Virus record (IMG/VR): IMGVR_UViG_3300020195_000009
Location: 1 to 64,000 of that record
Strand: one strand, 5' to 3'
DNA length: 64,000 nt
Below are positions 7,171 to 30,929 of the stretch, one piece after another (position 1 is the first letter of the stretch; each line of letters begins with the position of its first letter). A model generated the notes under the pieces. The model was not told the DNA's origin, ran no database searches, and was given only the letters and a program-made list of their open reading frames with translations. Position numbers and translations under genes: made by a program.

Positions 7171-7214
7171 GGATAGGCGTCTCTGCTGTGGCAGCGCCTA
7201 TCAAAAGATCCCTG

Positions 7215-8508: not shown

Positions 8509-8515
8509 TACACCG
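8509..8515 (-). promoter_or_regulatory. CGGTGTA motif upstream of clpX
   Basis: CGGTGTA-10 nt-ATG; one of 14 such upstream sites. Confidence 0.65.
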
Positions 8516-12713: not shown

Positions 12714-13592
12714 CTACACCAACTTGTAGTTTTTCTGGAAGTTACCTGCGAAGGATGGAGTCTGCTTGTGGCACGGGACGCATAGAGTCCGCCCGTTTGA
12801 GATGTCCCACATAGCTTCGCAACCGTAGGCGTCTTCGAGGGTTCGGATGTTGTACTCCACGAGGAGGACGGCGAATGGCTTGATGTGATCGGCGTGAAGT
12901 GGACCTCCAACCCGACCACACTCTTGGCACGTGAACTTGTCGCGGTTGAAGACAGCCTTCCTCCAGGTAACGGAGCGTTCGGTGTTGCGAATCAAGAGCG
13001 CAAGCGAAGTCTTGCCGCCCTGCCAGTTGGAACCGTTGGGGCCTTGAAAGCGACCTCGATTAGCTTGAGAGATCCGTTGTTTAGCTTCCGAACTGTGAGT
13101 ACGACCAAAGAAAGGGTTGAGAGGTCCCACCTTTTTGGACCCCGCTTCTGATAGAGCCTGGCGGACTTCGGGTCGGGCCATTGCCTCGCGATTAGCAGCC
13201 CTCCAAGTTTCCGTTTGAGTGATAGCCTTGAGTCTAACGCCTGCCGCCGCTTTAACCTCCTCCGAGTGGGTTCGACCAAACATCGGATTCCTTGACCCAG
13301 AGACCGCCACACTTCGACGAGCTTTGACCTCTGGTTTCAGGTTGGTCTCCCGAAGGGTTTCCGAAGTTCGTTTGCGTGCCTCTTCGGACTTGGGCTTCCC
13401 GAACATCGGGTTTCGGGGACCTGAGAGAGCTTCGGACTTGGACCTGGCGGGGATGCCTTGAATCTTCATCCACTTGCGGATCGAAAGCTCCGAAATCCCG
13501 TCCAAGCGGGCAATCTGTCGTATCGAGAGGCCCTCCACAACATAGCGCTGATACAGGTATTCTTTGGTGAGGTTGAGCGCTTTCACACTCAA
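12714..13592 (-). mobile_element. Free-standing HNH homing endonuclease with NUMOD3-like repeats
   Basis: Repeats NPMFGK, NPMFGRTHSEE, NPFFGRTHSSEAK; C-terminal CQECG...LHADHIKP...NGRTLCVPCHK. Confidence 0.9.
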
Positions 13593-13631
13593 CCATCTGT
13601 ATCAAAGAACTAATGATCCTTCTCTGGGAGC

Positions 13632-14678
13632 TTAGACTGCCACCTTCATACTGAGAGCAGGCCAGGGGGTGTACCCTTCGAGAACGAAGTGCTTCATAAC
13701 CTCTTCGGTCGAAATCGTTGGGTCCATGAGCGCTTCGATGTCGGTGAGATCCTTGATTTGATCCGATATGATCAGCTTCGGGAGTGGGCGAGGCTCTCGG
13801 GTCAACTGCTCCTTGAGCGCAGGCACGTGGTCGTACTCGGCTTTTGAGCCATCTGGTTTCGCTGTGTATATGTGTGCATCGACGAGTGCGTGACCGAAGA
13901 TACCCGGCTCGATGCCGGAAAACCTTGAAAACAGGTGAATAAGCAAAGCATAGCTCGCGATGTTGTAACCGACACCTAATCCGACATCCGCGCTCCTCTG
14001 CGTCAGGTGGAGACAGAGGCGCCGCACAGCAGGGTAGTTCGGAACAGTCACCGAGAAGTGTCGATCCAGGTCGTCGCGGGAAGTCCTTGAGAGCACCTCA
14101 CCGACTGTTTCTTTAGATGCGGCCCGCTTGAGGTCTTCACCCACGAAGTGCTCCAGCGGACGTGGCTCGTTCTGCACGTTGAACATGAACAGGCAGTGGC
14201 ACGGCGGGAGCTTGCTCGTCTGAGCGTTTCCCGGAGCCCACGCTGAGACGATCATGCGCCGGGACATGGGGTTCTTCTTCAACTCGGCGAGAACCCACGC
14301 GATCTGGTCGTTGAACTTGCAGGCGTCCATACCGTCGATCGTGTGGTCCGACGAGTCGATGGTCCCGTGAACGGGGAACTGCCGCCAGAAGTTGCCGTAG
14401 GCGCTCGGGACCTTGCCGCTGGAATCCGCCCACGCGTCCCAGAACTTGCAGCCGTGCTGCTTGAGGATCGAGATGTCAGTCTGGCCGCTGAGGAACCATA
14501 ACATTTCAATGACGATGTTCTTCCAGCTCACCGACTTGGTGGTGAGGAGAGGGAAGCCGGTCCTCAAGTCGTGCTCGTAGTAGTACCCGAAGGTCGAGAG
14601 CGTATCCACGCCCGTTCGGTTTTCCTTGCGAGTCCCCGTCTCCAGCACGTGCTTCACGAGATCGATGTAGGCTTTCAC
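13632..14678 (-). CDS. thyA: Thymidylate synthase with an insertion of about 49 aa
   Basis: RTGVDT, GFPLLTTK, EMLWFLSG, NPMSRRMIVSAW, LPPCH, QRSAD...YNIASYALL, DAHIY. Confidence 0.95.
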   Translation of the reverse strand: MKAYIDLVKHVLETGTRKENRTGVDTLSTFGYYYEHDLRTGFPLLTTKSVSWKNIVIEMLWFLSGQTDISILKQHGCKFWDAWADSSGKVPSAYGNFWRQFPVHGTIDSSDHTIDGMDACKFNDQIAWVLAELKKNPMSRRMIVSAWAPGNAQTSKLPPCHCLFMFNVQNEPRPLEHFVGEDLKRAASKETVGEVLSRTSRDDLDRHFSVTVPNYPAVRRLCLHLTQRSADVGLGVGYNIASYALLIHLFSRFSGIEPGIFGHALVDAHIYTAKPDGSKAEYDHVPALKEQLTREPRPLPKLIISDQIKDLTDIEALMDPTISTEEVMKHFVLEGYTPWPALSMKVAV

Positions 14679-14737: not shown

Positions 14738-15463
14738 TCAGACGGGGTCTTCTCTGTCGAATCGGGTTGGGATCTTCTTGCGGTTGATGGGTTCATGCCC
14801 CATCCGAAGGTCCTTAATCATCCATTTGTCCGTGAACTTGAGGATGCAACTAGGGTTATCCCCGACAAGCCCGAAGCGATCCTTCGTCACCGTAGCCTCG
14901 ATACCGTCCTCGTGGGGTTCGAGGCGCAAGCTGACGGCGCTTCCGTGTGCAATCGCTGTCGGAGTTCCAAAGTTGGCGGTCTTCATCTCTGCTCTCGTGG
15001 CCTGTTTTCTGAGCTGCCACGTCATGAGCAACGCTACTCCCGGTCTTTCCGCCAACGCCTTGCCAACTTTCGGCACCCAATTTGTGAACATACCGGCGAT
15101 GGAGACGTTGCGCCGATCCGTGGTGAGCATATTGGGTGAGTCTAGGACGACCAATCCGCATCCATCCGACGTTACCGAGCGAAGAGCTGCTGCGAGACAC
15201 TCCTCCAGGCTGGTCGGATTCATCGTGTTGAAGCTAAGGTTGGAGTTCAACCCCAAGGTGAAGAGACGATCAGAAGAGACCGACGCTTCGCAGTCGAAGT
15301 ACATCGTCTTGCGGTTTCGTCGTGCTGCCGCCGCCGCTACCGCAAGACCGAGAGTCGTTCGACCTGTCCCCGTTTCCCCCATGATCACGGAGAGACATCC
15401 CCCAGGAAACCCCCCTTGGAGGATCTTGTCGAGATTCTTGCTTCCGGTCCCGAACGAGATCAT
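14738..15463 (-). CDS. RecA/RadA-like ATPase-fold protein with a non-canonical Walker A
   Basis: TGSKNLDKILQGGFPGG...GETGTGRTT, YFDCE, LVVLDS. ATG at 15463 forms an ATGA overlap. Confidence 0.75.
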   Translation of the reverse strand: MISFGTGSKNLDKILQGGFPGGCLSVIMGETGTGRTTLGLAVAAAAARRNRKTMYFDCEASVSSDRLFTLGLNSNLSFNTMNPTSLEECLAAALRSVTSDGCGLVVLDSPNMLTTDRRNVSIAGMFTNWVPKVGKALAERPGVALLMTWQLRKQATRAEMKTANFGTPTAIAHGSAVSLRLEPHEDGIEATVTKDRFGLVGDNPSCILKFTDKWMIKDLRMGHEPINRKKIPTRFDREDPV

Positions 15464-16020
15464 GAGCGGCGAGCTTTCATCCTGGCGATGACCTCGGACC
15501 AAGACTTCACTCGAAGGTCATCTAGGCCAAGGTTCCGGGTGTTAGGGCACTGCCATAGCATGGCAGTGCCCTGAGGGTGACGTTCTGCCCAGCCCGACAC
15601 GTGAGAAGGATTGTCATCCAGGAGCCCGCCCCCTTGGACCATGTGTTTGCTCGACGTGTAGATGATATCCTTGGACGAGAAGGAGAAGTGTTCCTTGAGC
15701 CACTCCGTCCGCTCGTAGGTCCAGTTGCGGCTATGTTGGGGCGTCGTCACGGCCACCACGTGAACGAAGGTCCGAAGCTCCCGGATCGCTTCGAGGGCCT
15801 CCGGGTAGGCCTTGAGAGACTGGCAGAATCCGTGCTTCTCGAACAGGGTGAAGCACACCTTTTTCTGGTCTTCGGTCAGGACCGTGAAGATGTCCCACAC
15901 GTCGAAGTCGGCCGGTTGGTACCTTCGGCCCGTGATGACGGCCATGATGTCGAGAGCCGGAGTTTGGAAGTCACATAGAACTTCATCTACGTCTACGAGG
16001 AGAACCTCACTGTCAGTCAT
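15460..16020 (-). CDS. 5'(3')-deoxyribonucleotidase (HAD family)
   Basis: LVDVDEVLCDF (DxD), ERTEWLKEHF, KHMV...LLDDNP. Confidence 0.85.
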   Translation of the reverse strand: MTDSEVLLVDVDEVLCDFQTPALDIMAVITGRRYQPADFDVWDIFTVLTEDQKKVCFTLFEKHGFCQSLKAYPEALEAIRELRTFVHVVAVTTPQHSRNWTYERTEWLKEHFSFSSKDIIYTSSKHMVQGGGLLDDNPSHVSGWAERHPQGTAMLWQCPNTRNLGLDDLRVKSWSEVIARMKARRS

Positions 16021-16307
16021 CCCACCTGTACACCATGCTTAGCCAGCATGGCCTTCAAGGCGGGGTCGTCCTCTTCGTCTGGGTCCTCATGGGCCATCTG
16101 GAGAACCCTAGAAAAGCGGTCCGTCCCGGTCTTCCAGCCGTCGATGGCCTCGTGGACCACCTTGGTTACTTGGTCTTGCTCTTCCGGGGTCCGAGCCCTG
16201 GCGTACATGAGCCGGAAGGTCTCGACTTGCTCAGCATTCAGCTCTTTCCCGACGTGGCGAGCTTTGAGAGCGAGAATCAGCGTGTTTTTACGTTGCCTCA
16301 GACCCAT
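16017..16307 (-). CDS. Hypothetical protein
   Basis: ORF track; ATGA overlap with the downstream gene. Confidence 0.6.
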   Translation of the reverse strand: MGLRQRKNTLILALKARHVGKELNAEQVETFRLMYARARTPEEQDQVTKVVHEAIDGWKTGTDRFSRVLQMAHEDPDEEDDPALKAMLAKHGVQVG

Positions 16308-16547: not shown

Positions 16548-16874
16548 TTACACCGGATCCCGAGCATCGGCTCGAAGACGAGCCTGGTCCGCCATCATAC
16601 GATCAAACTTCTTGCGGTTGGACTTGCCGGCCTTGACGATCAGGCTCAGTTCCGTCTGAAGGTTTGCCCGGACCTTGGGGTCGGAGGCGGTCTTGATAGC
16701 CCTGGAGGTGCGCACGAACTCCTGACGGGCTCGAACCAGCCAGTTGGACAGGCCCTTGATCTCGCCCGTCACGTCCTCGCCCGTCCCCCAGCAGCGGAAG
16801 CAGATGCCCCGGCAAACATGGGAAAAGCGGGAAAGTACCCCTTCACCCTTACAACGTTCGCATGTAGTTCCCAT
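16548..16874 (-). CDS. Small protein with a DnaJ-type CxxCxGxG zinc finger
   Basis: CERCKGEG...CFRCWGTG. Confidence 0.65.
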   Translation of the reverse strand: MGTTCERCKGEGVLSRFSHVCRGICFRCWGTGEDVTGEIKGLSNWLVRARQEFVRTSRAIKTASDPKVRANLQTELSLIVKAGKSNRKKFDRMMADQARLRADARDPV

Positions 16875-17389: not shown

Positions 17390-18565
17390 TTAGATGACTT
17401 CGACGCTAGTACCCGTGACAGGAGCCTCAGCCACCTCGACCGCGTAGATTTTGCTCCAATCGACCCAAAGGTCGGCGCCAATCTCCGTCTCGATAGCCCA
17501 CCTATCGTGGATTTCTTGGGTCCGGCACCAAAAGCCCCCCTCATCCACATCAAGGTACCCGGCAGGTTCGGACAGATAGATCCCGATCTCCAGCTCTACG
17601 GACACGGGGAGAACCCGAGCCCTTCCCTGGAGGAGTTTGGCCACATTGGGAGTGGCAATCCAAAACCCACTCGTTCTACCTTCGATGACCTCTGGGAAGG
17701 GGGTCGCTGGCTTGGTTCTCCCCCCTTGGATAGCCGCCGAGGCCAACTGTCGAGCAAGGTCTCTCACCCAACCCGTTGCCGTAGCTCCAAGAATGGCCCG
17801 TCGAACGTCGAACCTAAGGTTCCGGGCAGTCGGGTCTTGGATGGGGTACTTCGAGGTCCCAAAGCCCTTGAGGCCTCGTATGCGGTCCAACCCACCTCCA
17901 GAGGGCTTACCTAGCGGGAAGAAGTCCTGGAAGGCTCTGGCCATCCCTGTTGAGGAAGCGAGAAGGGTCGGAAGAGCGCTTTGAACTTGGGAAGTAAGCA
18001 TCCGTCGTCCTGCTCTGGACGTGAACAGGAGCCGGCTGTCCCCATCGTCTCGGAGCAGGGCCGTTTGCGGTATCCGCTCCAGGAGGCGCTCTAAGACATC
18101 CCGCTCCCGCCCTTGGTCGAAGGCCCATTGGACGATGAAACCCTCTACCTCGGGCTTTAGGCGCTTCGCAGGGAGCACCATGTTGCCACTCTCCCTTGGG
18201 ACGGGAGCCGGCTGGTAGAGGTCGTCGTCCGTGATGCGAGCTAAAGCCCGGCCGGTCTCAGCAGACACGAGAAGGATTGAGTCCCCGATCTGCGTGTATT
18301 CATCTGCGAGGTACCCGGCTTCTTCTTGAACGTCATCGTGTGGGAAGGACTTTTTTAACTCCTGGATCAGACGCTCTTTGAGCCAGTCTGCCGGTCGCCC
18401 TTCCGTTCGAGCCTGCTTGAAAAGGTCAGATATTTCAGGGGTCTGTTGAACCACGACACGAGCAAGTCGAAGAAGCCCAGGGCTTGGGTTCGTGTGCGAG
18501 AGGACCTTCACGTCCACTCGTGACAAACCTACCTCAGGGGCAGGCTTCGTAAGCTCGTCGATCAT
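17390..18565 (-). CDS. Hypothetical protein (391 aa)
   Basis: Long ORF with an ATGA overlap; no family recognised. Confidence 0.7.
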   Translation of the reverse strand: MIDELTKPAPEVGLSRVDVKVLSHTNPSPGLLRLARVVVQQTPEISDLFKQARTEGRPADWLKERLIQELKKSFPHDDVQEEAGYLADEYTQIGDSILLVSAETGRALARITDDDLYQPAPVPRESGNMVLPAKRLKPEVEGFIVQWAFDQGRERDVLERLLERIPQTALLRDDGDSRLLFTSRAGRRMLTSQVQSALPTLLASSTGMARAFQDFFPLGKPSGGGLDRIRGLKGFGTSKYPIQDPTARNLRFDVRRAILGATATGWVRDLARQLASAAIQGGRTKPATPFPEVIEGRTSGFWIATPNVAKLLQGRARVLPVSVELEIGIYLSEPAGYLDVDEGGFWCRTQEIHDRWAIETEIGADLWVDWSKIYAVEVAEAPVTGTSVEVI

Positions 18566-18856: not shown

Positions 18857-20437
18857 TCAGGTACTTGAACCCCCACCTCTGATCATCTTGAACTGCTCGC
18901 TCCTGTGATTAGAGGCCAAACGAGCACGAATTCCGTCGTCTACGGTTTCGTCGTAACCGACCCACTCCAGGATCTCTTTGATCTCGTCCGTCATCGTCTT
19001 GATGATGCGAGGGCGACGGGACAGCTCGGTACCCAGAATCTCTTCATCGAGACCAGGCTTTCCTTGCGTGAACGACTCAACCATCGCCTCTTGGATCGAT
19101 TGCTCGATCTCACGACCAACGAGGTTTTTCCCCTTGTCTGCGAGGTCTGCGAGGTTGAAGCTGGACATGTCTTGCCCGGACTTTTTGGCGTGGATCTTCA
19201 GGATGTCGATCCGGTCTTCTTCGTTGGGAAGATCAAAGAAAAACCGTTGGGGCATCCGGTTGACCATCTCGACCGGGAGGGTCTTGAGACTGTTGGCCGT
19301 CATGGCAATGCACACAGGAGTCTTGGACTCCTGAGCCCACGTGGACAGGATGCCGAGAAGACGAGACGTGGTACCAGCATCCGACTGAGCCGACGACTGG
19401 CCACCCGCGAGAGACTTCTCCGCCTCATCGATCCACATGACGCAGGGGGAGACGGACTCCACGATGCGGAGGGCTCGGTAGAGGTTACCTTCCGAGTCTC
19501 CAACGCCCGAAGACCGGAGCTTTCCCATCTCGAATTGAACGAGGGGGAGGTCCCATTCCCGAGCCATGGCTTTGGCGCAGACACTCTTGCCGCACCCGTA
19601 GACGCCGACGAGGAGAACACCCCGAGGCGGCTTGAGGCCGAACTTTTGCCCCTTGTCGGACCAACACGCCTTGGACTTCTTAGCCCAAGCCTTGAATCGC
19701 TGGGCTCCGCCGATCGTGTCGAAGGTCTCTTCCGTCGTATCGACGAACGACACAAGGTCCGTTTTTTTGAGCTGGTTTCGCTTGTACTCCGCCACGAACT
19801 TGGGATCGACTCGACGGGGCTCAACAGGGTCCTTCTTGGTCCTCACGACCGACTGAGTGATCGCCTGCTCAACTTCGTACGAGGTCATCCCCTTGAAGAT
19901 GTTGGCGGAATCCTTCGGTACTGGCGACCGGAGTTGCTTGCAGAACGTCTCCACGAGCGAGTTGATTTCCTCGCCCGTCATCCCGGTGTCCTGAACGACC
20001 TCGATGTACCGCTGGAGCTTTTCCGGAATCACCTTCCGGGGACCCGCGAAGATCAAGCACTTGACGATGCGAAGGTCCTGATGGAGCTGGTGGATGATGT
20101 TGAGAACCCGGCGAACGACTTGCTCATCCTTGAGGAACCGATCCGGGTCCGTGATGATGTAGAAGTTCTCGTTGTCCTTCGGGTCATCCTGGTAAATCTT
20201 GATCAGGGCATCGTTGATGGTCGCCGCATCCGGCGAAACCGTATGCGAACGGCTAGACCAATCACGGATGATGTTCCCGATCGGCTGGAGCCCAAGGGCT
20301 CCGTTGTAAACCCAGGTCCGGTTCTCGTGCTTCTTCATTTGCTCGTGAAAGCGAACGATGAAGCGGTCTTCTTCGTCGGTCACGAAGTAGAGGGCGCGAG
20401 TTAGAGACCGAAGGTGGTGGATCAGTTCGGGGGTCAT
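18857..20437 (-). CDS. Ycf46-like AAA+ ATPase
   Basis: N-terminal inactive AAA-like domain (LYFVTDEEDR); PPRGVLLVGVYGCGKSVCAKA, MWIDEAEK, TANS, RFFFDLPNEEDR. Confidence 0.9.
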   Translation of the reverse strand: MTPELIHHLRSLTRALYFVTDEEDRFIVRFHEQMKKHENRTWVYNGALGLQPIGNIIRDWSSRSHTVSPDAATINDALIKIYQDDPKDNENFYIITDPDRFLKDEQVVRRVLNIIHQLHQDLRIVKCLIFAGPRKVIPEKLQRYIEVVQDTGMTGEEINSLVETFCKQLRSPVPKDSANIFKGMTSYEVEQAITQSVVRTKKDPVEPRRVDPKFVAEYKRNQLKKTDLVSFVDTTEETFDTIGGAQRFKAWAKKSKACWSDKGQKFGLKPPRGVLLVGVYGCGKSVCAKAMAREWDLPLVQFEMGKLRSSGVGDSEGNLYRALRIVESVSPCVMWIDEAEKSLAGGQSSAQSDAGTTSRLLGILSTWAQESKTPVCIAMTANSLKTLPVEMVNRMPQRFFFDLPNEEDRIDILKIHAKKSGQDMSSFNLADLADKGKNLVGREIEQSIQEAMVESFTQGKPGLDEEILGTELSRRPRIIKTMTDEIKEILEWVGYDETVDDGIRARLASNHRSEQFKMIRGGGSST

Positions 20438-20460
20438 TTTCAAAGGCTCCGTGATTAATG

Positions 20461-20467
20461 TACACCG
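20461..20467 (-). promoter_or_regulatory. CGGTGTA motif upstream of the AAA ATPase gene
   Basis: Lies just after the 16-bp hairpin; reads CGGTGTACATT. Confidence 0.6.
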
Positions 20468-20477
20468 ACGAAAGCGA

Positions 20478-20514
20478 AGAGCCGCACCTTTCTAACTCAG
20501 AAAGGTGCGGCTCT
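20478..20514 (-). terminator. 16-bp perfect hairpin between DUF1257 and the AAA gene
   Basis: AGAGCCGCACCTTTCT-AACTC-AGAAAGGTGCGGCTCT, followed on the minus strand by TCGCTTTC (weak U tract). Confidence 0.6.
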
Positions 20515-20533
20515 CACGCTAACCCTTCGGTGT

Positions 20534-20866
20534 TCACGCCATCCGGCAGAACTGGGTCACGTCCCCGTTCTTCTCGATGATGCGTTCCCCGAGGATGTGA
20601 CCCTCTTTGAAGGCCACGGCCCGGAACTTGGCCTCAGCATAGTCCTGACGGAGCAAGCCGAGCTTGCCCTGGTCGGCTCGGTAGTAGTCGACATCCCCGC
20701 TCCTGATCACCCCCGTCTTGAGGTTGATCTCGGCGCCGTTGAAGTCGCCGGAGAGCATGTGGATCGTGTCCCCCTGCTCTCGGAACTCGATGTTCTTGCC
20801 CTTGAGGGCCGTGATGAGGTGCTCGCGCTCCTTCATGTCCGACTGAACCGTAACTCGATGCGACAT
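20534..20866 (-). CDS. DUF1257 (Ycf35-like) protein
   Basis: MSHRVTVQSDMKEREHLITALK...LRQDYAEAK...KEGH, in the usual position beside a Ycf46-like AAA gene. Confidence 0.7.
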   Translation of the reverse strand: MSHRVTVQSDMKEREHLITALKGKNIEFREQGDTIHMLSGDFNGAEINLKTGVIRSGDVDYYRADQGKLGLLRQDYAEAKFRAVAFKEGHILGERIIEKNGDVTQFCRMA

Positions 20867-20894
20867 GTTCTCTTCCTTTCCTTGAACTTGTGAG

Positions 20895-20920
20895 GGGTGA
20901 TAGGGTTTACCCTATCACCC
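20895..20920. other. 11-bp perfect inverted repeat overlapping the DUF2997 stop
   Basis: GGGTGATAGGG-TTTA-CCCTATCACCC; no U tract follows on the minus strand. Confidence 0.6.
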
Positions 20921-21100
20921 GCTGTTGACTTCGTGAACCGTCGGGCAGTTGCCGTCGGGGAGGTGCTCGTCCGAGACCAGCGTACCCATCTGCTGGGTCA
21001 CCTTGCTGATTTCGTTGCAGTCGTGATCCCGACGGTTGATGACCTCGTGGACCACCTTTCCGTCTGGCTTGAAGGTGACCTTGTATTCCATCGATTCCAT
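20915..21100 (-). CDS. DUF2997 protein
   Basis: YKVTFKPDGKVVHEV...DC...TQQMGTLVSDE; synteny with DUF1257 and the AAA gene. Confidence 0.7.
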   Translation of the reverse strand: MESMEYKVTFKPDGKVVHEVINRRDHDCNEISKVTQQMGTLVSDEHLPDGNCPTVHEVNSG

Positions 21101-21140: not shown

Positions 21141-21776
21141 TTACTCTACACCGTTTCCCCCGAAACGAACAGTAGCTCCTCGTTTGACGACGACAACCCC
21201 TTCTTCGGGAGCTTCGGCGCCTTTCGGGCCAGCCCATGGGTCTTTGGGTGGCGTCGGAGAAGATCCTGACAACATTCTACCACTTTGGCTCGGAGTGTTC
21301 AGAGCTAGAAGTTGAGGCGTTAGCCTCACTGGCTCCTTTTTTTGTGGATCCTCGGTTGAAACATGAGCCTGAGGTTGGGGTTTTGGGGGACTCTCCGGTA
21401 CCATTTCGATCGGAGGTGGGGCTTCTTCCACCGGGAGACTCATGATCGGAATGGGAACCGAGACCGCAGGCTCCACGAGGTCTCGTGGGTCCATCCACGC
21501 AGATTGCCCTCTTACCGTAGGCAGGGGCCCAGGGTCAAACATCTTGAATTGTTTGCCTTGGATCTGCGAAAACCTTGGGTCAGAGGGATCCATTCGAGGG
21601 ACTTCCGAAAAGAGCCGCTTCTCCCAGGTCATCACCCGCTGGTCGAACTTGCTGGTACCATGCTGAGACCGGGTACATTCGGGTTGAACGCACCGATCAC
21701 AAAACTGCAACTTGAAGTCCTCGTAAGGGACCTGTTGATTGTTGCACTCCCCGAGCTGGTCCAGACGCCTGACCAT
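21141..21776 (-). CDS. Hypothetical protein with N-terminal Cys cluster and Pro-rich C-terminus
   Basis: C...FCDRCVQPEC; Pro-rich tail. Confidence 0.65.
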   Translation of the reverse strand: MVRRLDQLGECNNQQVPYEDFKLQFCDRCVQPECTRSQHGTSKFDQRVMTWEKRLFSEVPRMDPSDPRFSQIQGKQFKMFDPGPLPTVRGQSAWMDPRDLVEPAVSVPIPIMSLPVEEAPPPIEMVPESPPKPQPQAHVSTEDPQKKEPVRLTPQLLALNTPSQSGRMLSGSSPTPPKDPWAGPKGAEAPEEGVVVVKRGATVRFGGNGVE

Positions 21777-21801: not shown

Positions 21802-24800
21802 CTAGAGCCCATGGTCACGCAACCTACGGGCAAATTCTTCGGGATTGATACGAATCCCCAGGTTAGGGTCGATGAGGGTCTCGTTCGTCTGCCCACATAC
21901 AAGGTGAAGAATTTTGCAGCTCCCCACATCCAAAAGGTTGATGCAGACCCCTGCAACCTGTCGAATAGAGAGGAGGGTGGTGACAGGAAGCTGGTAGGTG
22001 AAGACCTCTAGTTTCCCGTTACCGTTCGTTTTCCCATTCACTTGAGGGGTTGGTGGGGCTGGAGTCGCTTGCACGGGAGCCGCAACCGCTGGGGTTGTAG
22101 GTAGAACCGGAGCCGGAGTCTCCGGTCCCTTTGGAGTGATTGAGGTTGAGACGGGGGCAGCTACGGGCACCGGAGGAAGAGGAGCTACGGCTTGAGACTC
22201 CTCGCCTTCAAGTTGGGGCATGTAGTCAGGGCGTAGGTGACCTTCGAGCCACTCAGGTACCTTCTGGTAAACCTTGTCCCCAATGCGAACCTCGGTGGCC
22301 TTGAGGGGCTTCTCACCCTCTTTCGGGGGCCGAAGCTCCCCCTTCATGATTTTCTTGTAGTCGTACTTGGCGTCCCATGTCGTGTCGATGAGGGCTTCTA
22401 CTTCCAGCTCAACCTCCCAACGAATCAACCGACCGGGGAGCGTCATCAACCTGTCGATGACAGGCATCGCCTTTTGAAGGATGTGGTGCTTGACCTCGAA
22501 CACGATTTCGTCGTGAACCGTCATGAGCATCCGAATGAGATCCTGTTGCATCCACCCAAGGCGGTAGAACTCCTTGTGTAGGAGAACTAGCGCCATTTTC
22601 ATGATGTCGGCGCCGGCCCCTTGAATCGGGTAGTTGATTGACCAACGCTCGGCTGCTCCAACGAGGGGCTTGTCCTCGCTGTCGATCTCTGGGATGTAAA
22701 TCCACCGACCGAAGGGGGTCTTGATGCCCTTTTTGGCGTGAACGTAAGCCTTTTGCTCTTTCACCCACTTGGTGAAGATGGGCATGGCTTTGTCGAAGTT
22801 GGCCTTCCTTCGAGCCCCTTCCTGCTGGCTGCACCCGGTTGCACGCATAATCGCCTGTGCTCCACCTCCGTACACGAGGGAGAAGTTGGCGATCTTGCCT
22901 TGCTGACGCTCTTGCTTGGTGATTTCAGCCTTGTTGAAGAAGGCTCGGGCCGTGATGCTGTGGAGGTCTCCGGTACCTTCCTTGAACTCCTTGATCCAAA
23001 CCGGCTCTTTTGAGAGGTTGGTGACGATGCGTAGCTCTTCGCCAGCAAAGTCCACCTTGACCATCGTGAAGCCTTCCCGAGCTTTGAAGGCTTGTCGGAG
23101 AGCGGTCGCTACCTTGGGCTTCTTCTCGTCGTATGTCCCAGGGATCCCGTGAGGAGGGAACCCGCAGAAGCCATGCTCAGGCTTACCGCCTGGCGCTGAG
23201 ATACGACCTGTAGCAGCTCCGTGCTGCTTGAACTGGAGCCTAGCTTCATTGTTCGAGTCGCAGTTCGCGACCATAGATTCAAGGTAGGTTCCGATGACCT
23301 TCTCGACCTGTCGGTACTTGACGATGACGAGGAGAACCGAGTTGACCTTGGCATCCCCCTCAACGAGCTTCTCCAGAGTGTCTGCGTCGGTCTTGAACCA
23401 TCCGGACTTCTCGTTTCGCTCCGGCTTGGGGGTGATGTTGAGACCGTTCGGGCTGTCGAAGAGGAACTCCGAAAGCTGCTGTGGGGACTGAGGGTCGAAC
23501 CCATGAAAGCCGTGCTGGTCGGCAAGAGCTACGATTTGCTCCCGATACCCATCCGCTTCCTTTCGGGCGGTCTCAAAGAGAGACTTAACGTAGGGAATGT
23601 CGAGGTAGACTCGGTTCCGTTCCATGCCTCGAAGGGCCTGAGCCGTCTGTTTCTCCAGACGGTAGGTGCTGGCGTAGAGCGGATCCCGAGCAAGAAGAAT
23701 AAGGGCTGGGTTGTCGCAGTGAAGGTACGTGCAGATGGCGTCCGAACAGGCGTAGCGAAGACCCTCTTCTGGGTGAAGGCTTGCGAACTGAATCTCCCGC
23801 CTTGCCCCACGTGAGGTGACAAACAGCTCTTTTAGCTCGATCATCTCGTAGGGGATCGACATACCCCGTTCATCTTTGATCGGCCCGTTGGGGCCTTGAA
23901 CGAACAACGTCTTCTCAGATTTGGTCTTGAGGCTCAGGTTCTTGTCGTTCGTGTACTTGCAATAGTAGAGAAGAAGCCCGTCCTCATGGGATTCTGGGTG
24001 CCAGAAGTCGATCCCTGTCACCGGATAGAGCATCTCCTGGTCGAACTTGGCGTTCCAGAAGAACAGTTTGACCTTGCCCTGCTCTTTGATGAGTGGGCTT
24101 CCAAGCGGGTCGTTCTTGAACCCCTCCTCCGTGAGAACAGGTTGCGCTGCCCTGCAAAGGCGCTGAATGGCCCTACCCGCACCCACGATGTCAACGTTGA
24201 CGGACTCTTCCGCTACGTGACGAACCGGGCAGTAGTACCCGGTTTTACCATCGGGGCTGAGGCAGTAGCCGACGATCTTGTGAACCGTTTGAGGGATCCG
24301 CTCAGGTCGAGCTGTACCCTCATCCCAATACTCCTCGAACACCTCACGGATGTCTTCGGGACGACGCCAGTAAACCCTGGTGTCGAGGCCCTGAGTTTCA
24401 AGATCGAGAGCGCACTTGCCGGATTTGAGAGCCGCATCCACGACTTCGTTGAGTTGCTCGACGCTCTTGATGAGGATGAACTCGTGGTACTTCATCCACG
24501 GCTTGATGATGTCTGGGACCTCGCGTTGCTGACGAAGCCCCATGTCGGCCATGTAGCTAGCCGCATCGGCACCCTCATCGCCTCCAGCCCCCCCGCCAAA
24601 CATGTCGTCATCTGAACTCTCTACGCTTGGAGCCGGAGAGAGTTGAATTGGGGCTTCATCATCAGACGGGTCCGGGGGCTCTTCCAAGACAACGGGAGCC
24701 AACCCCACCACGAGGTCGAGTGGTGAGTCTTCCTCCTCGGGTACCTCCTCGGAGGCCTCGAAGCGCTTGAGGATCTCTTCGATGGGTGTGGGGGTGATCT

Positions 24801-24873
24801 CTTCCTCTCCCGCCCAATCAGCGAGGCCCAGCACTTCCCCCAAGGGCTCGAAATCGCTATTGTTCGGCATCAA
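21802..24873 (-). CDS. polA: Family A DNA polymerase with a 3'-5' exonuclease domain and no 5'-3' exonuclease
   Basis: ExoI LDLETQG, ExoII NAKFD, ExoIII YACSDA; ATGRIS, motif A VDFAGEELRI, motif B RQQGKIANFSLVYGGG, NYPIQGAGAD, motif C VHDEIVFE. Confidence 0.95.
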   Translation of the reverse strand: MMPNNSDFEPLGEVLGLADWAGEEEITPTPIEEILKRFEASEEVPEEEDSPLDLVVGLAPVVLEEPPDPSDDEAPIQLSPAPSVESSDDDMFGGGAGGDEGADAASYMADMGLRQQREVPDIIKPWMKYHEFILIKSVEQLNEVVDAALKSGKCALDLETQGLDTRVYWRRPEDIREVFEEYWDEGTARPERIPQTVHKIVGYCLSPDGKTGYYCPVRHVAEESVNVDIVGAGRAIQRLCRAAQPVLTEEGFKNDPLGSPLIKEQGKVKLFFWNAKFDQEMLYPVTGIDFWHPESHEDGLLLYYCKYTNDKNLSLKTKSEKTLFVQGPNGPIKDERGMSIPYEMIELKELFVTSRGARREIQFASLHPEEGLRYACSDAICTYLHCDNPALILLARDPLYASTYRLEKQTAQALRGMERNRVYLDIPYVKSLFETARKEADGYREQIVALADQHGFHGFDPQSPQQLSEFLFDSPNGLNITPKPERNEKSGWFKTDADTLEKLVEGDAKVNSVLLVIVKYRQVEKVIGTYLESMVANCDSNNEARLQFKQHGAATGRISAPGGKPEHGFCGFPPHGIPGTYDEKKPKVATALRQAFKAREGFTMVKVDFAGEELRIVTNLSKEPVWIKEFKEGTGDLHSITARAFFNKAEITKQERQQGKIANFSLVYGGGAQAIMRATGCSQQEGARRKANFDKAMPIFTKWVKEQKAYVHAKKGIKTPFGRWIYIPEIDSEDKPLVGAAERWSINYPIQGAGADIMKMALVLLHKEFYRLGWMQQDLIRMLMTVHDEIVFEVKHHILQKAMPVIDRLMTLPGRLIRWEVELEVEALIDTTWDAKYDYKKIMKGELRPPKEGEKPLKATEVRIGDKVYQKVPEWLEGHLRPDYMPQLEGEESQAVAPLPPVPVAAPVSTSITPKGPETPAPVLPTTPAVAAPVQATPAPPTPQVNGKTNGNGKLEVFTYQLPVTTLLSIRQVAGVCINLLDVGSCKILHLVCGQTNETLIDPNLGIRINPEEFARRLRDHGL

Positions 24874-25291
24874 TCACCACAACTGTATACACCCCCTGCC
24901 GCCAGAACTGGACCAGCTCCGCAACCAAACGTCGAGCATTTGGGTCTTCGATGCCAGAGGGCTCAAAGCACCATGGCATCTTAGTGGCCGTTGGGACGCA
25001 CTCCTTAGGTCGATAGAAAGGGCAGGGATCTCGTCTCTCACACACACGATTGTCAACAGGCAACTTTCGCAGAGCCCCATCGGGGGGGATCCCAAGAGCC
25101 TTCACAAGGGGTGAAGTCCACCCCGCCAGAGCATGATCCATGACCGCTTTCTGGACCTTTGTAAGCAAGCTCATTGCGGGGACCTCTTGGGCCGGAGCCC
25201 ACGTGTCTTCCCACCGATCCCCGTACTGGTAGATGAGGTACAACTCCAAGTCCCCCAGCTCAGAGGTCTTGATTTTTAGGCGTCTAGGCAC
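24857..25291 (-). CDS. Hypothetical Cys-containing protein
   Basis: CERRDPCPFY...C...WC. Confidence 0.65.
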   Translation of the reverse strand: MPRRLKIKTSELGDLELYLIYQYGDRWEDTWAPAQEVPAMSLLTKVQKAVMDHALAGWTSPLVKALGIPPDGALRKLPVDNRVCERRDPCPFYRPKECVPTATKMPWCFEPSGIEDPNARRLVAELVQFWRQGVYTVVVIDAEQ

Positions 25292-26157: not shown

Positions 26158-27642
26158 TTACACCGAGAACATCCCCTCTACCGATTTCTCGATAGAGTGA
26201 GCCACGTTACGGTGATCTTCGAGACTCATACCCTTGTCACTACTCGTCCCAGCAAACTGGTCACGGTTGTAGATGCTCCTTGTCTTCCAGTCGACACCAG
26301 CCACGAAGGGGGCGAAGAACTGCCCATCTCTTCGTTTTAGGCAGTCGAAGAGTGTCGTCCCAGCAGTCCGGTGCTCATCATTCAGGTACGTCGTTGTAAC
26401 GACGTCAGCACTCCGCTCAGCCTCGTTGGCGTAGCTGAGGGCTCGGAGCTTGTAGCGACCTTCGGACTTGTCTGCATAATCCTTACCGTCACGGTTGATC
26501 TGGAAGAGCAGGAGAACAGCTACTTTCTCACCGTGGTTGAAGTGCAACGCAAGCTTCTTTGAGTCACGAATGACCGAGTTCAACTCGATCGTGTAGTCCT
26601 TGCCACGCTTCTTTCGACGGGGCTCTACGAGGCCACCGTGGTCGATGATGAGCAGGTGGATCTCGTTCTTCTGGTGAGCAAGCTCCGCTTGCATCTTGAT
26701 GTCGTCAGGGGTGACGTCATCATCGGGACTCCAAACGTCGAAGGACCCGTACTCAGGGTTGTTGACGAAGTCGTCGATCACAATCTTGTAGAACTGCTCT
26801 TCCGCCGCTGTCAGAGTGCCCGCACAAATCTTGTCGTACTCAAGAGGATCGTAACCCAGGGCCTTAAACCTTGGGTTCGCCGAGTGGAGGGCGTAGATCA
26901 TCTGCCGTAGTTGCTCGTACGGCATCTCCAGCGTTATGTAGTAGACGTTGGAGCGGTAGCGGGTAACCAGATTGTACGCCCAATTGAGGGCAAAGGTAGT
27001 TTTCAGCTCACCTGTGAATGCAGCATGCAACCAAAGTTCACCCTTCTTGACTCCTCGGATGATCTTGTCGATGTCGTTGAGCCCGCAGAACTTACCCCAG
27101 GCGAGCCCCTTGTTGGCCTTGGCCTCCTGGTACTGATCCCAAACGTCTTGCCCGTCTTCACGGAGGTTTCCTTGAAGGCGTGTGTTGTGCTGGTAGACCA
27201 GAAGCTTGTGGGCATTCTGGGAGAAGTGAAGGACGCCCTCACGAAGCCCCTGCTTCTTCTCCTTGTCAATGACAAGACCCTTGGCGATGATTTCTTGAGC
27301 TTCTTTTAGAAGCGTGATGGCCTTGATCTTGTTCTGCTCTTCGACCGTGGAAGAGAGCAGGTGGGAGTAATTTGTACGGATGTAAGGCTTCGCACCGTCG
27401 AAGTCCTTGATTCTTTCGGAAACCTCCTGGTCCCGACGGGTCTCGAAGTAGTCCGAGATGGTCTGCCGAGCTGGGATCTCCAACCGCTGCTGGAAGAAGT
27501 TGAGAATGAACTCGTAGATGCGTTGGTCGGCTGGCTGCGTCCACTCGACGTGGGCAGCAATGAGCTTTTGAAAATTGCCGATGAGGTTCTCTTGAGAGAC
27601 CCCACCATCCACATCGATGACCGAACGAAGAAGGCCTTTCAT
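26158..27642 (-). CDS. DnaB-like replicative helicase (SF4)
   Basis: GLNDIDKIIRGVKKGELWLHAAFTGELKTTFALN, YITLEMPYEQL, LLIIDH, LLFQINR, ERSADVV. Confidence 0.85.
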   Translation of the reverse strand: MKGLLRSVIDVDGGVSQENLIGNFQKLIAAHVEWTQPADQRIYEFILNFFQQRLEIPARQTISDYFETRRDQEVSERIKDFDGAKPYIRTNYSHLLSSTVEEQNKIKAITLLKEAQEIIAKGLVIDKEKKQGLREGVLHFSQNAHKLLVYQHNTRLQGNLREDGQDVWDQYQEAKANKGLAWGKFCGLNDIDKIIRGVKKGELWLHAAFTGELKTTFALNWAYNLVTRYRSNVYYITLEMPYEQLRQMIYALHSANPRFKALGYDPLEYDKICAGTLTAAEEQFYKIVIDDFVNNPEYGSFDVWSPDDDVTPDDIKMQAELAHQKNEIHLLIIDHGGLVEPRRKKRGKDYTIELNSVIRDSKKLALHFNHGEKVAVLLLFQINRDGKDYADKSEGRYKLRALSYANEAERSADVVTTTYLNDEHRTAGTTLFDCLKRRDGQFFAPFVAGVDWKTRSIYNRDQFAGTSSDKGMSLEDHRNVAHSIEKSVEGMFSV

Positions 27643-30318: not shown

Positions 30319-30319
30319 G

Positions 30320-30907
30320 TCAGTCCTTGGTGGGCCAGAGGTCGACCGAGATCGGAGGCAAGCGTTCGCCCGCCTCGATGGCATGACGCCGCTCTTCGTC
30401 CATCTGGGCTTCCATCTCCCGCATCCGTTGGTGGTCCGCTTCCGTTGGCATGGGCTCCTCAAAGCGGCCATTTGAAGCTGACCTTGCCATCTTGACGTGA
30501 TCGATGAACTCTTTCGGGGGTCGAACGTTGTGGGCCTCGACGTAGTGTGCGAACCCCTGTGGCCAAACGAAGACGGAGTCCCCGAGGCACATCGAGCCGT
30601 TGTGAATCTTGCAGAGACGGCACCCCGAATAGCCCCTCCACTGCATGAGGGACTTCCCGCCTTTGAGGAAGGACGCGACCAGGCGTCTCTCTTCTTCACT
30701 CCACGTGTTGTCGATGAAGTCCTTGGGGTCCGGAAGCGAGGCATACTTCGCCACGTAGTCCTTTTGCCAGGCGGACATCGCCGGATTCGAGTCCGGCTCC
30801 CCCGCGTAGACCTTCCAGTACCCGATGCCCTTGAGCCCTTGAATTTCCGAGTAGAACCTCCCGGAGGACCCGTCGATGAGGAACGTCGGATGGGCAGTAA
30901 GGATCAT
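30320..30907 (-). CDS. Hypothetical protein with a Cys/His motif
   Basis: WRGYSGCRLC...NGS...FVWPQGFAHYVEAHNV; GGTGTA motif upstream. Confidence 0.65.
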   Translation of the reverse strand: MILTAHPTFLIDGSSGRFYSEIQGLKGIGYWKVYAGEPDSNPAMSAWQKDYVAKYASLPDPKDFIDNTWSEEERRLVASFLKGGKSLMQWRGYSGCRLCKIHNGSMCLGDSVFVWPQGFAHYVEAHNVRPPKEFIDHVKMARSASNGRFEEPMPTEADHQRMREMEAQMDEERRHAIEAGERLPPISVDLWPTKD

Positions 30908-30929
30908 GCCCTCGTTACACCGAGGTAGG

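What the first reader, a model, noticed from the sequence alone, without database searches (positions are those of the whole stretch)
18857..21100. Phage-encoded Ycf46-like AAA + DUF1257 + DUF2997 module
All three genes are adjacent and co-oriented. This trio is known as a conserved neighbourhood in cyanobacteria and some other bacteria, with function unresolved to my knowledge. Its presence among phage early/middle genes, with GGTGTA motifs before DUF2997 and the AAA gene, suggests an AAA remodelling machine with two small adaptors used during infection (inference).
Basis: partly seen in the sequence, partly recalled or inferred. Interest (0 to 1): 0.6.

Follow-up and report, generated by a model that had tools for sequence, protein, structure and literature searches.

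The report
Phage Ycf46-type AAA with two partners
A huge phage carries, next to its DNA polymerase, a divergent copy of a widespread but never-explained three-gene set (a Ycf46-type AAA ATPase plus the small proteins DUF1257 and DUF2997) that many bacteria also keep as one operon. The finding is real, but it is a new member of a known, uncharacterised kind rather than a new system.

Summary
The three genes are present, adjacent and co-oriented on the minus strand: AAA 18857-20437, 110-aa gene 20534-20866, 61-aa gene 20915-21100.

- **AAA:** a full-length homologue of cyanobacterial Ycf46 (33% identity, E 1e-66). It shares the family motifs and a p97-like fold: a dead N-terminal AAA-like domain plus one live AAA module.
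- **Small proteins:** both fail Pfam's own cut-offs. Profile-profile comparison ties them to DUF1257 (97.8%, E 1e-12) and DUF2997 (94.2%, E 1e-7).
- **Conservation:** the block PolA - Cys4 protein - DUF2997 - DUF1257 - AAA - 391-aa protein is syntenic in 47 of 47 related huge-phage loci. The trio also occurs in cultured Pseudomonas, Rhizobium and Rhodobacter siphophages. It is a tight operon in 30 of 30 DUF2997 loci sampled from one bacterial phylum.
- **Cyanobacteria:** Ycf46 sits beside a truncated DUF1257 only. A DUF2997-Ycf35 pair lies elsewhere.
- **Partners:** a complex model supports DUF1257-DUF2997 binding (0.67 against 0.02 for the best control). One MAG fuses the two proteins.
- **GGTGTA:** the motif is clade-conserved before DUF2997 and before AAA, and a strong hairpin separates the two units.

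Function is unknown in any organism. My best guess is a hexameric remodeller working with a heterodimeric cofactor. I rate it a new member of a known kind, of moderate interest.

The parts
18857..20437 (-). Ycf46-family AAA+ ATPase (526 aa from ATG 20437; the ORF is open from TTG 20443). It has a degenerate N-terminal AAA-like domain (about residues 1-200, with E22-E23-D24 where a P-loop would be). It has one active classic AAA module: Walker A 278-285, Walker B 337-341, Arg 394.
   Evidence: Pfam AAA E 1e-20 and PHROG 8638 E 2e-83 over the full length. Model pLDDT 86.7. Foldseek matches p97/Cdc48 D1-D2 at E 1e-20. Atlas 'ycf46' clusters match at TM 0.72-0.79. It is 33% identical to cyanobacterial Ycf46 over residues 14-493.
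20462..20533 (-). Stable RNA hairpin in the spacer between the DUF1257 gene and the AAA gene (core stem 20477-20515). It is a candidate terminator, attenuator or processing site.
   Evidence: MFE is -48.9 kcal/mol for the 96-nt spacer, z = -7.5 against shuffles. Most related loci also have an unusually stable spacer. The consensus terminator scan does not call it, because there is no T-run.
20461..20466 (-). GGTGTA motif 24 nt upstream of the AAA ATG; promoter-like element.
   Evidence: Conserved 9-75 nt upstream of the AAA start in 34 of 39 distinct related loci.
20534..20866 (-). Divergent DUF1257 (Ycf35-like) protein, 110 aa, with an invariant N-terminal Met-Ser.
   Evidence: No direct Pfam hit. 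18 of 46 orthologues hit DUF1257. The family HMM finds bona fide DUF1257 at E 1.5e-12. hhalign gives 97.8%, E 9.8e-13 over 106 columns. Atlas TM 0.76. Model pLDDT 80.
20915..21100 (-). Divergent DUF2997 protein (61 aa; probably 58 aa from ATG 21091), with the family's invariant Cys (C28).
   Evidence: Pfam DUF2997 at E 0.013, 15.8 bits, covering 3-45 of 47 positions. PHROG 23133 at E 1e-6. 12 of 40 orthologues hit DUF2997. hhalign gives 94.2%, E 1.2e-7.
21147..21152 (-). GGTGTA motif 46 nt upstream of the DUF2997 ATG. It lies inside the last codons of the upstream gene, where it reads Gly-Val.
   Evidence: Present 19-93 nt upstream of the DUF2997 start in 36 of 39 related loci, with the synonymous positions fixed.
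21141..21776 (-). Syntenic upstream neighbour (211 aa) with four invariant Cys (C11, C26, C29, C34) and a Pro-rich middle. It is possibly a zinc-binding protein. Membership of the module is not shown.
   Evidence: Present in 47 of 47 related loci. Alignment A6. No Pfam, PHROG or PDB match. Absent from the bacterial trio loci.
17390..18565 (-). Syntenic downstream neighbour (391 aa), unknown function. Membership of the module is not shown.
   Evidence: Present in 46 of 47 related loci. No Pfam, PHROG or PDB match. Absent from the bacterial trio loci.

Best explanation
The locus encodes a phage copy of the prokaryotic Ycf46-DUF1257-DUF2997 system. The AAA protein is built like p97. A catalytically dead N-terminal AAA-like domain is stacked on one active classic AAA module, and it presumably forms a hexamer. 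DUF1257 and DUF2997 form a heterodimer in which the last beta-strand of DUF1257 pairs with the first strand of DUF2997. I infer that this dimer works with the ATPase as a cofactor or specificity factor, or possibly as its regulated client. Together they would use ATP to remodel or take apart a protein complex during infection. In this huge-phage clade the genes are fixed inside the DNA-replication cluster. They appear to be expressed as two units, DUF2997-DUF1257 and then AAA, each preceded by a GGTGTA element and separated by a strong hairpin.

Shown: family identities, synteny, motif conservation. Modelled: the DUF1257-DUF2997 contact. Inferred: the contact with the ATPase, hexamer formation, the target and the timing.
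For: - **Family identity:** (AAA; DUF1257; DUF2997).
- **Functional linkage by conserved neighbourhood across unrelated lineages and different gene orders:**
  - 47 of 47 huge-phage loci.
  - Cultured phages SM1, L338C and RcKickapoo, with the order AAA-x-x-DUF1257-DUF2997.
  - 29 of 80 prokaryote loci.
  - 30 of 30 DUF2997-centred loci in one phylum.
  - Ycf46 beside DUF1257 in 5 of 5 cyanobacteria.
- **DUF1257-DUF2997 binding:**
  - Complex prediction ipSAE 0.67 (runs 0.65, 0.68, 0.67) against a best control of 0.02.
  - At least 91% of contacts are shared between runs, and partner pLDDT is at least 66.
  - That mark was reached by 58 of 80 solved complexes and by 2 of 110 mismatched pairs. 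The counts are only rough here because my own alignments were used.
  - A natural DUF1257-DUF2997 fusion exists in L141, joined exactly where the model puts the interface.
- **Importance to the phage:** strict core synteny, and an intein inserted just before Walker B in a relative.
- **Two expression units:**
Against:
- The huge-phage clade has Gly/Ala/Asn in place of the family's Leu/Ile at pore loop 1. This argues against ordinary substrate threading.
- The DUF1257 fold gives only generic platform-like matches (Z at most 7.5, within background), so 'adaptor' is not backed by structure.
- Genomic context differs between phage groups: replication genes here, lysis genes in SM1-like phages. A replication role is therefore weakly founded.
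- In cyanobacteria DUF2997-DUF1257 pairs with a ferredoxin gene rather than with the AAA (PMC4284462). The dimer can therefore work without an adjacent AAA.
- There is no expression data.
Confidence: 0.45

Rival explanations
1. The small proteins are not helpers of the ATPase but its substrates, or an inhibitor/antitoxin-like pair. The set would then be a conflict module (abortive infection, superinfection exclusion or anti-defence), like the AAA-plus-partner systems SgiAT and IetAS.
For: AAA ATPases of the SpoVK/Ycf46/Vps4 group act as the antitoxin in SGI1 sgiAT (PMC10954446). NCBIfam gives a weak IteA anti-phage ATPase hit (53.6 bits). The trio is patchy in bacteria, found in 42 of 151 genomes of one phylum. 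It moves between phages and cells.
Against: The IteA hit is far under its cut-off of 510 bits and covers only the generic AAA part. No protease or nuclease partner is present. The genes are core, single-copy and strictly syntenic in the replication cluster of 47 of 47 phages rather than in a variable island. In bacteria the AAA tree largely follows taxonomy.
Confidence: 0.15
2. The module mimics a host growth or stress checkpoint. In cyanobacteria the ycf46 operon marks (p)ppGpp-dependent growth arrest. The phage copy would push the host into, or hold it out of, such a state.
For: In Synechococcus elongatus the three-gene ycf46 operon is induced at severe stress and in the dark. It needs (p)ppGpp, runs opposite to ribosomal genes, and Ycf46 is reported to interact with KaiC (PMC13683863). 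I find that operon to be RHH - Ycf46 - DUF1257-like, so it is the same pairing as here.
Against: The evidence in cyanobacteria is correlative. The phage's host is unknown (mat and sediment metagenomes). The phage AAA is not close to any host clade. No RHH gene accompanies the phage copy.
Confidence: 0.1
3. The ATPase is a virion-assembly or general folding chaperone, as proposed for MoxR, BCS1 and Clp homologues of jumbo phages. The small proteins would be co-chaperones.
For: Jumbo phages carry several AAA+ chaperones with proposed assembly roles (PMC7824862). In SM1-like phages the AAA gene follows lysis genes, away from replication genes.
Against: Here the genes lie between PolA, DnaB-like and SNF2 helicases and nucleotide-metabolism genes, not among structural genes. 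The phage already has ClpX-like and DnaJ-domain genes. The same trio is a chromosomal operon in bacteria that build no virions.
Confidence: 0.1
4. The adjacency has no functional meaning: three unrelated small phage genes happen to sit together.
For: The direct Pfam scans of the two small proteins fail.
Against: Linkage recurs in 47 of 47 related phages, in three other phage groups and in many bacterial phyla, with rearranged gene order and one gene fusion.
Confidence: 0.02

Closest known systems
Cyanobacterial/plastid Ycf46 (Synpcc7942_0417, slr0374) and its three-gene operon
   Same: The whole-length architecture is the same, and identity is 33%. Shared features are the N-domain T-x-E-E-x-R motif, the C-terminal W...R-A-R-x-A-S motif and a single Walker A. 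A DUF1257-type gene lies immediately beside it.
   Different: The phage proteins form their own long branch outside every prokaryote clade. They lack the hydrophobic pore-loop residue and carry an 8-residue C-terminal insert. They have DUF2997 and a full-length DUF1257, where the cyanobacterial operon has an RHH gene and a C-terminally short DUF1257.
Bacterial AAA-DUF1257-DUF2997 operon (Myxococcota, Verrucomicrobiota, Planctomycetota and others; uncharacterised)
   Same: The same three families occur in one tight cluster. This is the closest counterpart.
   Different: The usual order is AAA-DUF1257-DUF2997, whereas here it is DUF2997-DUF1257-AAA. The bacterial small proteins pass the Pfam cut-offs (54-84 bits) and the phage ones do not. 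The phage set lies in a replication cluster and is flanked by two clade-specific genes.
Ycf35 (DUF1257) - DUF2997 - Fed7 cluster of cyanobacteria
   Same: The DUF2997-then-DUF1257 gene order is the same as in the phage (PMC4284462).
   Different: The neighbour is a ferredoxin, with no AAA gene beside it. The phage record has no Fer4_12 gene and only a sub-threshold radical-SAM-like match.
AAA-DUF1257-DUF2997 genes of cultured siphophages (Pseudomonas SM1/PaMx31 group, Rhizobium L338C group, Rhodobacter RcKickapoo group)
   Same: A homologous AAA (about 30% identity over the C-terminal 60-70%) occurs with DUF1257 and DUF2997 a few genes away.
   Different: Two unrelated genes separate the AAA from the DUFs. 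The context is after lysis genes. An aromatic or aliphatic pore-loop residue is retained. These phages have 80-110 kb genomes.
p97/Cdc48-type double-ring AAA unfoldases with Ufd1-Npl4-type cofactors
   Same: The fold matches D1-D2 over the whole chain. The cofactor-plus-ATPase logic is the working model.
   Different: The resemblance is structural only. D1 is dead here, there is no N-domain of the p97 kind, there is no homology between the cofactors, and pore loop 1 lacks the gripping residue.

Membership tests
Ycf46 family of AAA+ ATPases | About 500 aa, with a non-catalytic N-terminal half followed by a single classic AAA module | tested here: met
   Pfam AAA matches only at residues 276-404. 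There is one Walker A. The model shows a degenerate alpha/beta N-domain plus an AAA module. Atlas TM is 0.72-0.79 to 'ycf46' clusters over residues 1-514.
Ycf46 family of AAA+ ATPases | Full-length sequence homology to cyanobacterial Ycf46 (the gene in the RHH-Ycf46-DUF1257 operon) | tested here: met
   32-33% identity over residues 14-493, E 7e-67 to 9e-64 in 5 of 5 cyanobacterial genomes. The operon structure was checked.
Ycf46 family of AAA+ ATPases | Family signature motifs outside the AAA core (N-domain T-x-E-E-x-R; C-terminal W...R-A-R-x-A-S) | tested here: met
   The group consensus lines show both motifs in the huge-phage, bacterial, cyanobacterial and siphophage groups.
Ycf46 family of AAA+ ATPases | Hydrophobic residue (Leu/Ile, or Phe/Trp/Tyr) at pore loop 1 before V-G-x-S-E | tested here: not met
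   The family reads F-G-G-[LI]-V-G-[ES]-S-E. The window and its clade read R-S-S-G-V-G-D-S-E or variants with Ala, Asn or Glu.
Ycf46 family of AAA+ ATPases | Orthology: placement inside a prokaryotic Ycf46 clade | tested here: not met
   The huge-phage sequences are one clade (support 100) on a stem of 0.89 changes per site, outside all prokaryote groups. This is a quick tree with long-branch warnings.
DUF1257 (PF06868, Ycf35-like) | Score over Pfam's gathering cut-off (22.2 bits) | tested here: not met
   No hit at E<=10 for the window protein. 18 of 46 orthologues hit at E<=0.1, best 1.7e-4.
DUF1257 (PF06868, Ycf35-like) | Profile-level homology to members that pass the cut-off | tested here: met
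   hhalign gives 97.8%, E 9.8e-13 over 106 of 110 residues. The phage-only HMM hits L072 and L133 at 1.5e-12 and 1.1e-10, and these score 80 and 84 Pfam bits.
DUF1257 (PF06868, Ycf35-like) | Same fold and the conserved N-terminal Met-Er start replaced here by the family's Met-Ser(-His) | tested here: met
   Atlas TM is 0.76 to a cluster that is 96% PF06868. M1 and S2 are conserved across 75 phage and prokaryote sequences.
DUF2997 (PF11211) | Score over Pfam's gathering cut-off (24.1 bits) | tested here: not met
   15.8 bits, E 0.013, but covering 3-45 of 47 model positions. 12 of 40 orthologues hit, best 5.4e-5.
DUF2997 (PF11211) | Profile-level homology to members that pass the cut-off, with the invariant Gly and Cys | tested here: met
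   hhalign gives 94.2%, E 1.2e-7 over 43 columns. C28 and G14 are invariant or nearly so in both sets.
AAA-DUF1257-DUF2997 conserved operon | All three families encoded side by side on one strand | tested here: met
   Window. Relatives: 47 of 47. Bacteria: 30 of 30 DUF2997 loci.
AAA-DUF1257-DUF2997 conserved operon | Physical complex of the three proteins | tested here: inconclusive
   Only DUF1257 with DUF2997 was modelled: 0.67 against a control of 0.02.
IetA/IteA-type anti-phage ATPase | Score over the NCBIfam cut-off (510 bits) and a partner protease | tested here: not met
   53.6 bits, on the AAA core only. No protease gene is adjacent.

The most novel reading that the evidence does not exclude
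In this huge-phage clade the Ycf46-type ATPase and its DUF1257-DUF2997 dimer have become a fixed part of the replication apparatus. They are locked next to PolA with two clade-specific partners (a Cys4 protein and a 391-aa protein). The ATPase would act as a non-threading segregase, since its pore-loop grip is lost, that loads, recycles or removes replisome components such as the DnaB/KaiC-like helicase. If so, it would give the first mechanistic handle on the long-unexplained Ycf46/Ycf35 proteins of cyanobacteria and plastids.
Probability: 0.12. Interest if true: 0.7.

Novelty: new member of a known kind. Interest (0 to 1): 0.48.

Why it matters
Ycf46 and Ycf35 (DUF1257) are conserved open reading frames of cyanobacteria and algal plastids whose biochemical role has stayed open for decades. 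This work shows four things:

1. The AAA, DUF1257 and DUF2997 genes form one recurrent unit across bacteria, cyanobacteria (in part) and at least four phage lineages.
2. The two small proteins probably form a heterodimer.
3. Cultured, tractable phages (Pseudomonas SM1 group, Rhizobium L338C, Rhodobacter RcKickapoo) carry the set.
4. A whole clade of 100-530 kb phages keeps it as a core gene block beside the polymerase.

Together these make the question testable in simple phage-host systems. For phage biology it adds a conserved core module, and a clade-wide GGTGTA promoter-like signal, to a poorly known huge-phage group. It does not reveal a new kind of system.

Tried and rejected
- **DNA and protein searches of the phage collection.** A megablast of the region found nothing. 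A tblastn of the 110-aa protein also found nothing.
- **Word-index searches of the small proteins.** These gave only close metagenomic kin without Pfam labels.
- **Direct Pfam and NCBIfam scans of the small proteins.** No usable hit.
- **Profile searches of the PDB.** Nothing was found for DUF1257, DUF2997, the Cys4 protein or the 391-aa protein.
- **Fold searches of the DUF1257 model.** Foldseek gave no match at E<=0.001. The wide VIA search gave Z at most 7.5 to generic alpha/beta platform domains (KA1, adaptin appendage, CPSF73/100 C-terminal domains). That is within the tool's stated background, so I draw no function from it.
- **NrdG-like radical-SAM neighbours.** They appear in about 7 trio loci and suggested an Fe-S link, echoing cyanobacterial fed7. 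I rejected this as context noise. Those contigs are near-identical across MAGs of different phyla and look like phage or mobile DNA. The window's genome has no Fer4_12 gene.
- **Donor or host inference from the AAA tree.** Not possible: the phage clade is a long separate branch.
- **Relatives of a virus record.** The genome search cannot draw them.
- **Corndog-type mycobacteriophages.** The small ORFs upstream of their AAA gene gave no DUF hit.
- **Expression.** No RNA run holds the region, and read laying was not used.
- **Literature.** No paper treats the phage module. A search for GGTGTA as a promoter gave only primers.
- **Searches not run.** The big representative search was not needed and was not run.
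- **An early error, corrected.** My early statement that cyanobacterial Ycf46 loci lack DUF neighbours was wrong for the main paralogue.
Full report
**Setting.** The window is the first 64 kb of a 286,005-bp IMG/VR virus record that CheckV rates about 60% complete. The DNA occurs in microbial-mat and sediment metagenomes, and no RNA run holds it. Around the finding, all on the minus strand, lie these genes:
- an SNF2 helicase (28600-30744)
- a DnaB-like helicase (26158-27642)
- a family-A DNA polymerase (21802-24873)
- a deoxynucleotidase (15460-16020)
- thymidylate synthase (13632-14678)
- a ClpX-like ATPase (7215-8498)
- a DnaJ-domain protein (5815-7170)

The module therefore sits in a replication and nucleotide-metabolism cluster. 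That it is 'early/middle' is inferred from this position only.

**The observation.** Three co-oriented ORFs are present.
- AAA runs from 18857 to 20443. The likely start is ATG 20437, behind a GGAG.
- The 110-aa ORF is 20534-20866.
- The 61-aa ORF is 20915-21100. Most orthologues start at the position of its fourth codon.
- A gene caller had shortened the 110-aa protein to 100 aa. The N-terminal Met-Ser is invariant in 46 relatives, which supports the longer form.

**The ATPase.**
- Pfam finds one AAA module at residues 276-404. PHROG 8638 (unknown function) covers the whole length.
- An AlphaFold model built on 44 sequences has pLDDT 86.7.
- Foldseek aligns the whole chain to the D1-D2 tandem of p97/Cdc48, NVL and Rix7 at E 1e-20.
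- The Atlas search gives TM 0.72-0.79 over residues 1-514 to clusters auto-named ycf46, one of them mainly cyanobacterial.
- The N-terminal half has no Walker A; invariant Glu-Glu-Asp stands in its place.
- A scan of one genome per species returned 80 prokaryote loci with 29-38% identity in the best-matching segment, most spanning nearly the whole protein.
- In five cyanobacterial genomes the best match reaches 32-33% identity over residues 14-493 (E about 1e-66). That gene sits in an operon of a ribbon-helix-helix gene, the ATPase and a DUF1257-like gene. This fits the published three-gene ycf46 operon of Synechococcus elongatus (PMC13683863).
- Motifs outside the AAA core are shared by all groups: T-x-E-E-x-R in the N-domain and W...R-A-R-x-A-S at the C-terminus.

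'Ycf46-like' therefore holds at family level. Two qualifications apply.
- The huge-phage proteins form one clade on a long stem outside every prokaryote group, so no donor can be named.
- At pore loop 1 the family has Leu or Ile (Phe, Trp or Tyr in some phages). This clade has Gly, Ala, Asn or Glu there. That residue normally grips the substrate in classic AAA unfoldases (established knowledge), so the mechanism may differ.

**The two small proteins.** Pfam's own thresholds are not met. Homology is nevertheless well supported.
- Many orthologues give sub-threshold hits to exactly these two families and to no other recurrent family.
- An HMM built from the phage family alone picks out ORFs lying directly beside the AAA gene in bacterial loci, at E down to 1.5e-12. 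Those ORFs and their neighbours are textbook DUF1257 (72-84 bits) and DUF2997 (53-68 bits).
- hhalign between the phage families and those bona fide sets gives 97.8% (E 9.8e-13, 106 columns) for DUF1257 and 94.2% (E 1.2e-7, 43 columns) for DUF2997.
- The Atlas adds TM 0.76 to a DUF1257 cluster and DUF2997-labelled nearest clusters.

**How conserved is the set.**
- *Related huge phages.* In 47 viral contigs of 20-529 kb whose AAA is 44-78% identical, all 47 have the order PolA, 211-aa Cys-rich protein, DUF2997, DUF1257, AAA. 46 of them also have the 391-aa protein.
- *Cultured siphophages.* Pseudomonas SM1, Rhizobium L338C and Rhodobacter RcKickapoo carry a homologous AAA, then two unrelated genes, then a 126-147-aa gene and DUF2997. 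That gene passes the DUF1257 cut-off in SM1 and L338C. All three DUF2997 genes pass theirs. At least 21 phage records carry DUF1257, and one record already labels it so.
- *AAA-centred prokaryote sample.* Of the 80 loci, 29 have DUF1257 and 30 have DUF2997 within the flanks, in 26 of them both and close to the AAA gene. They come from Verrucomicrobiota, Planctomycetota, Myxococcota, KSB1, Omnitrophota and others.
- *DUF2997-centred sample.* In the phylum of a Kofleriaceae MAG, 42 of 151 genomes have the gene. All 30 loci examined have the three genes contiguous.
- *Cyanobacteria.* The picture is split. One Ycf46 paralogue lies beside a DUF1257 that lacks the last part of the profile and has no DUF2997. 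A second paralogue has no such neighbour. A DUF2997-then-Ycf35 pair lies elsewhere; the literature groups that pair with ferredoxin fed7 (PMC4284462).

**Do the small proteins bind each other.** The complex test scored 0.67 (runs 0.65, 0.68, 0.67) against 0.02 for the best of three controls. At least 91% of contacts were shared between runs, and the partner's pLDDT was at least 66. The mark was reached by 58 of 80 solved complexes and by 2 of 110 mismatched pairs; the counts hold only roughly because my own alignments were used. The interface joins the last strand of DUF1257 (residues 100-110, plus helix 67-91) to the first strand of DUF2997 (residues 3-14). Two independent observations fit this.
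- A Clostridia MAG encodes one 184-aa protein with DUF1257 (1-122) running straight into DUF2997 (125-177).
- The cyanobacterial DUF1257 that has no DUF2997 beside it lacks the C-terminal part of the profile.

The model supports binding but does not prove it. Binding to the ATPase was not tested.

**Expression signals.** GGTGTA is not enriched in the window as a whole (20 sites against 15.7 expected). In the whole genome, 36 of 113 sites lie beside a same-strand gene start, against 6.3% for hexamers in general (P 1.6e-16). The commonest spacing to the start codon is 8-12 nt. Among 39 distinct related loci the motif lies 19-93 nt before the DUF2997 start in 36. There it sits inside the last codons of the upstream gene with its synonymous positions fixed. 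It lies 9-75 nt before the AAA start in 34. Four of the five loci without it there have spacers of at most 22 nt, and the fifth has 67 nt. The variable distance and the separate GGAG-type ribosome sites argue for a promoter-like element rather than a ribosome-binding site; this is inference. The 96-nt spacer before the AAA gene folds into a hairpin of -48.9 kcal/mol (z -7.5), and most relatives also have an unusually stable spacer. The simplest reading is two transcription units, DUF2997-DUF1257 and AAA onward, which would allow different dosage of the small proteins and the ATPase.

**Mechanism.** I commit to a p97-like hexameric remodeller whose partner is the DUF1257-DUF2997 dimer, with confidence 0.45. 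Linkage and the dimer are supported. The ATPase-dimer contact, the client and the timing are inferred. Four rivals remain:
- a conflict module, 0.15
- mimicry of a host growth checkpoint, 0.10
- an assembly chaperone, 0.10
- meaningless adjacency, 0.02

The remaining weight lies with mechanisms I cannot name. The lost pore-loop residue and the differing contexts in other phages are the main reasons for caution.

**Novelty and score.** No paper in the library treats the phage module. The three families, their neighbourhood in bacteria and their presence in some phage records are already in databases. The window adds a divergent member, a huge-phage clade in which the set is core, and a clade-wide regulatory motif. 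I rate it a new member of a known kind, with interest 0.48.

Noticed in passing
L009:4001-6922 (IMGVR_UViG_3300028654_000001, 512 kb): The orthologous AAA gene carries an in-frame insert of about 435 residues. The insert starts with Cys, ends with His-Asn followed by Cys, and contains a LAGLIDADG-type block. It is an intein with a homing endonuclease, inserted just before Walker B.
   Followed up: partly
L006, L008, L009 (PolA matches split at about residue 751-753): The PolA gene of three related phages is interrupted by about 1.25 kb between two well-conserved halves. It may be another intein or an intron; I did not look further.
   Followed up: no
whole genome G000; window examples 30916-30921, 26159-26164, 24888-24893, 16549-16554, 16029-16034, 12715-12720, 8509-8514 (all minus strand): GGTGTA, often preceded by C or T, marks many gene starts of this phage. 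The modal distance to the start codon is 8-12 nt, and it is conserved across the clade. It may be a phage-specific promoter or transcript-start signal, and no literature match was found.
   Followed up: partly
window 21141-21776 (-) and 17390-18565 (-): Two clade-specific genes always flank the trio. One is a 211-aa protein with four invariant Cys and a proline-rich middle; the other is a 391-aa protein. Neither matches anything in Pfam, PHROGs or the PDB, and both are absent from the bacterial trio loci.
   Followed up: partly
L153-L157 (cyanobacterial genomes G001-G005): Each cyanobacterium has two Ycf46-like paralogues. Only one lies in the RHH - Ycf46 - DUF1257-like operon, and its DUF1257 lacks the C-terminal part of the Pfam profile. 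Microseira (L158) also has an AAA followed by two DUF1257 genes.
   Followed up: partly
L141:9089-9643: A single 184-aa ORF in a Clostridia MAG fuses DUF1257 to DUF2997.
   Followed up: partly
L112, L117, L129, L134 (and L128): Nearly identical trio loci are binned into an archaeal MAG, two Gastranaerophilales MAGs and a sheep-rectum bacterium. They have NrdG-like and ComEA-like neighbours and a 420-aa protein ending in DUF1257. They are probably one gut phage or mobile element that was mis-binned.
   Followed up: partly
window 12714-14678 (-): Thymidylate synthase (348 aa, Pfam match in two stretches) lies next to an HNH/NUMOD3 homing-endonuclease gene. This suggests a mobile element at or in thyA.
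   Followed up: no
window 5815-8498 (-): The phage also encodes a ClpX-like AAA+ protein with the ClpX zinc finger and a DnaJ-domain protein, so the Ycf46-type ATPase is not its only chaperone-like gene.
   Followed up: no
DUF2997 alignments A3, A8: One Cys is invariant in DUF2997 from phages and bacteria alike. The huge-phage clade adds a second Cys in a G-P-D-C-D stretch. There is no explanation yet; a metal or redox role is possible given the ferredoxin neighbour in cyanobacteria.
   Followed up: no
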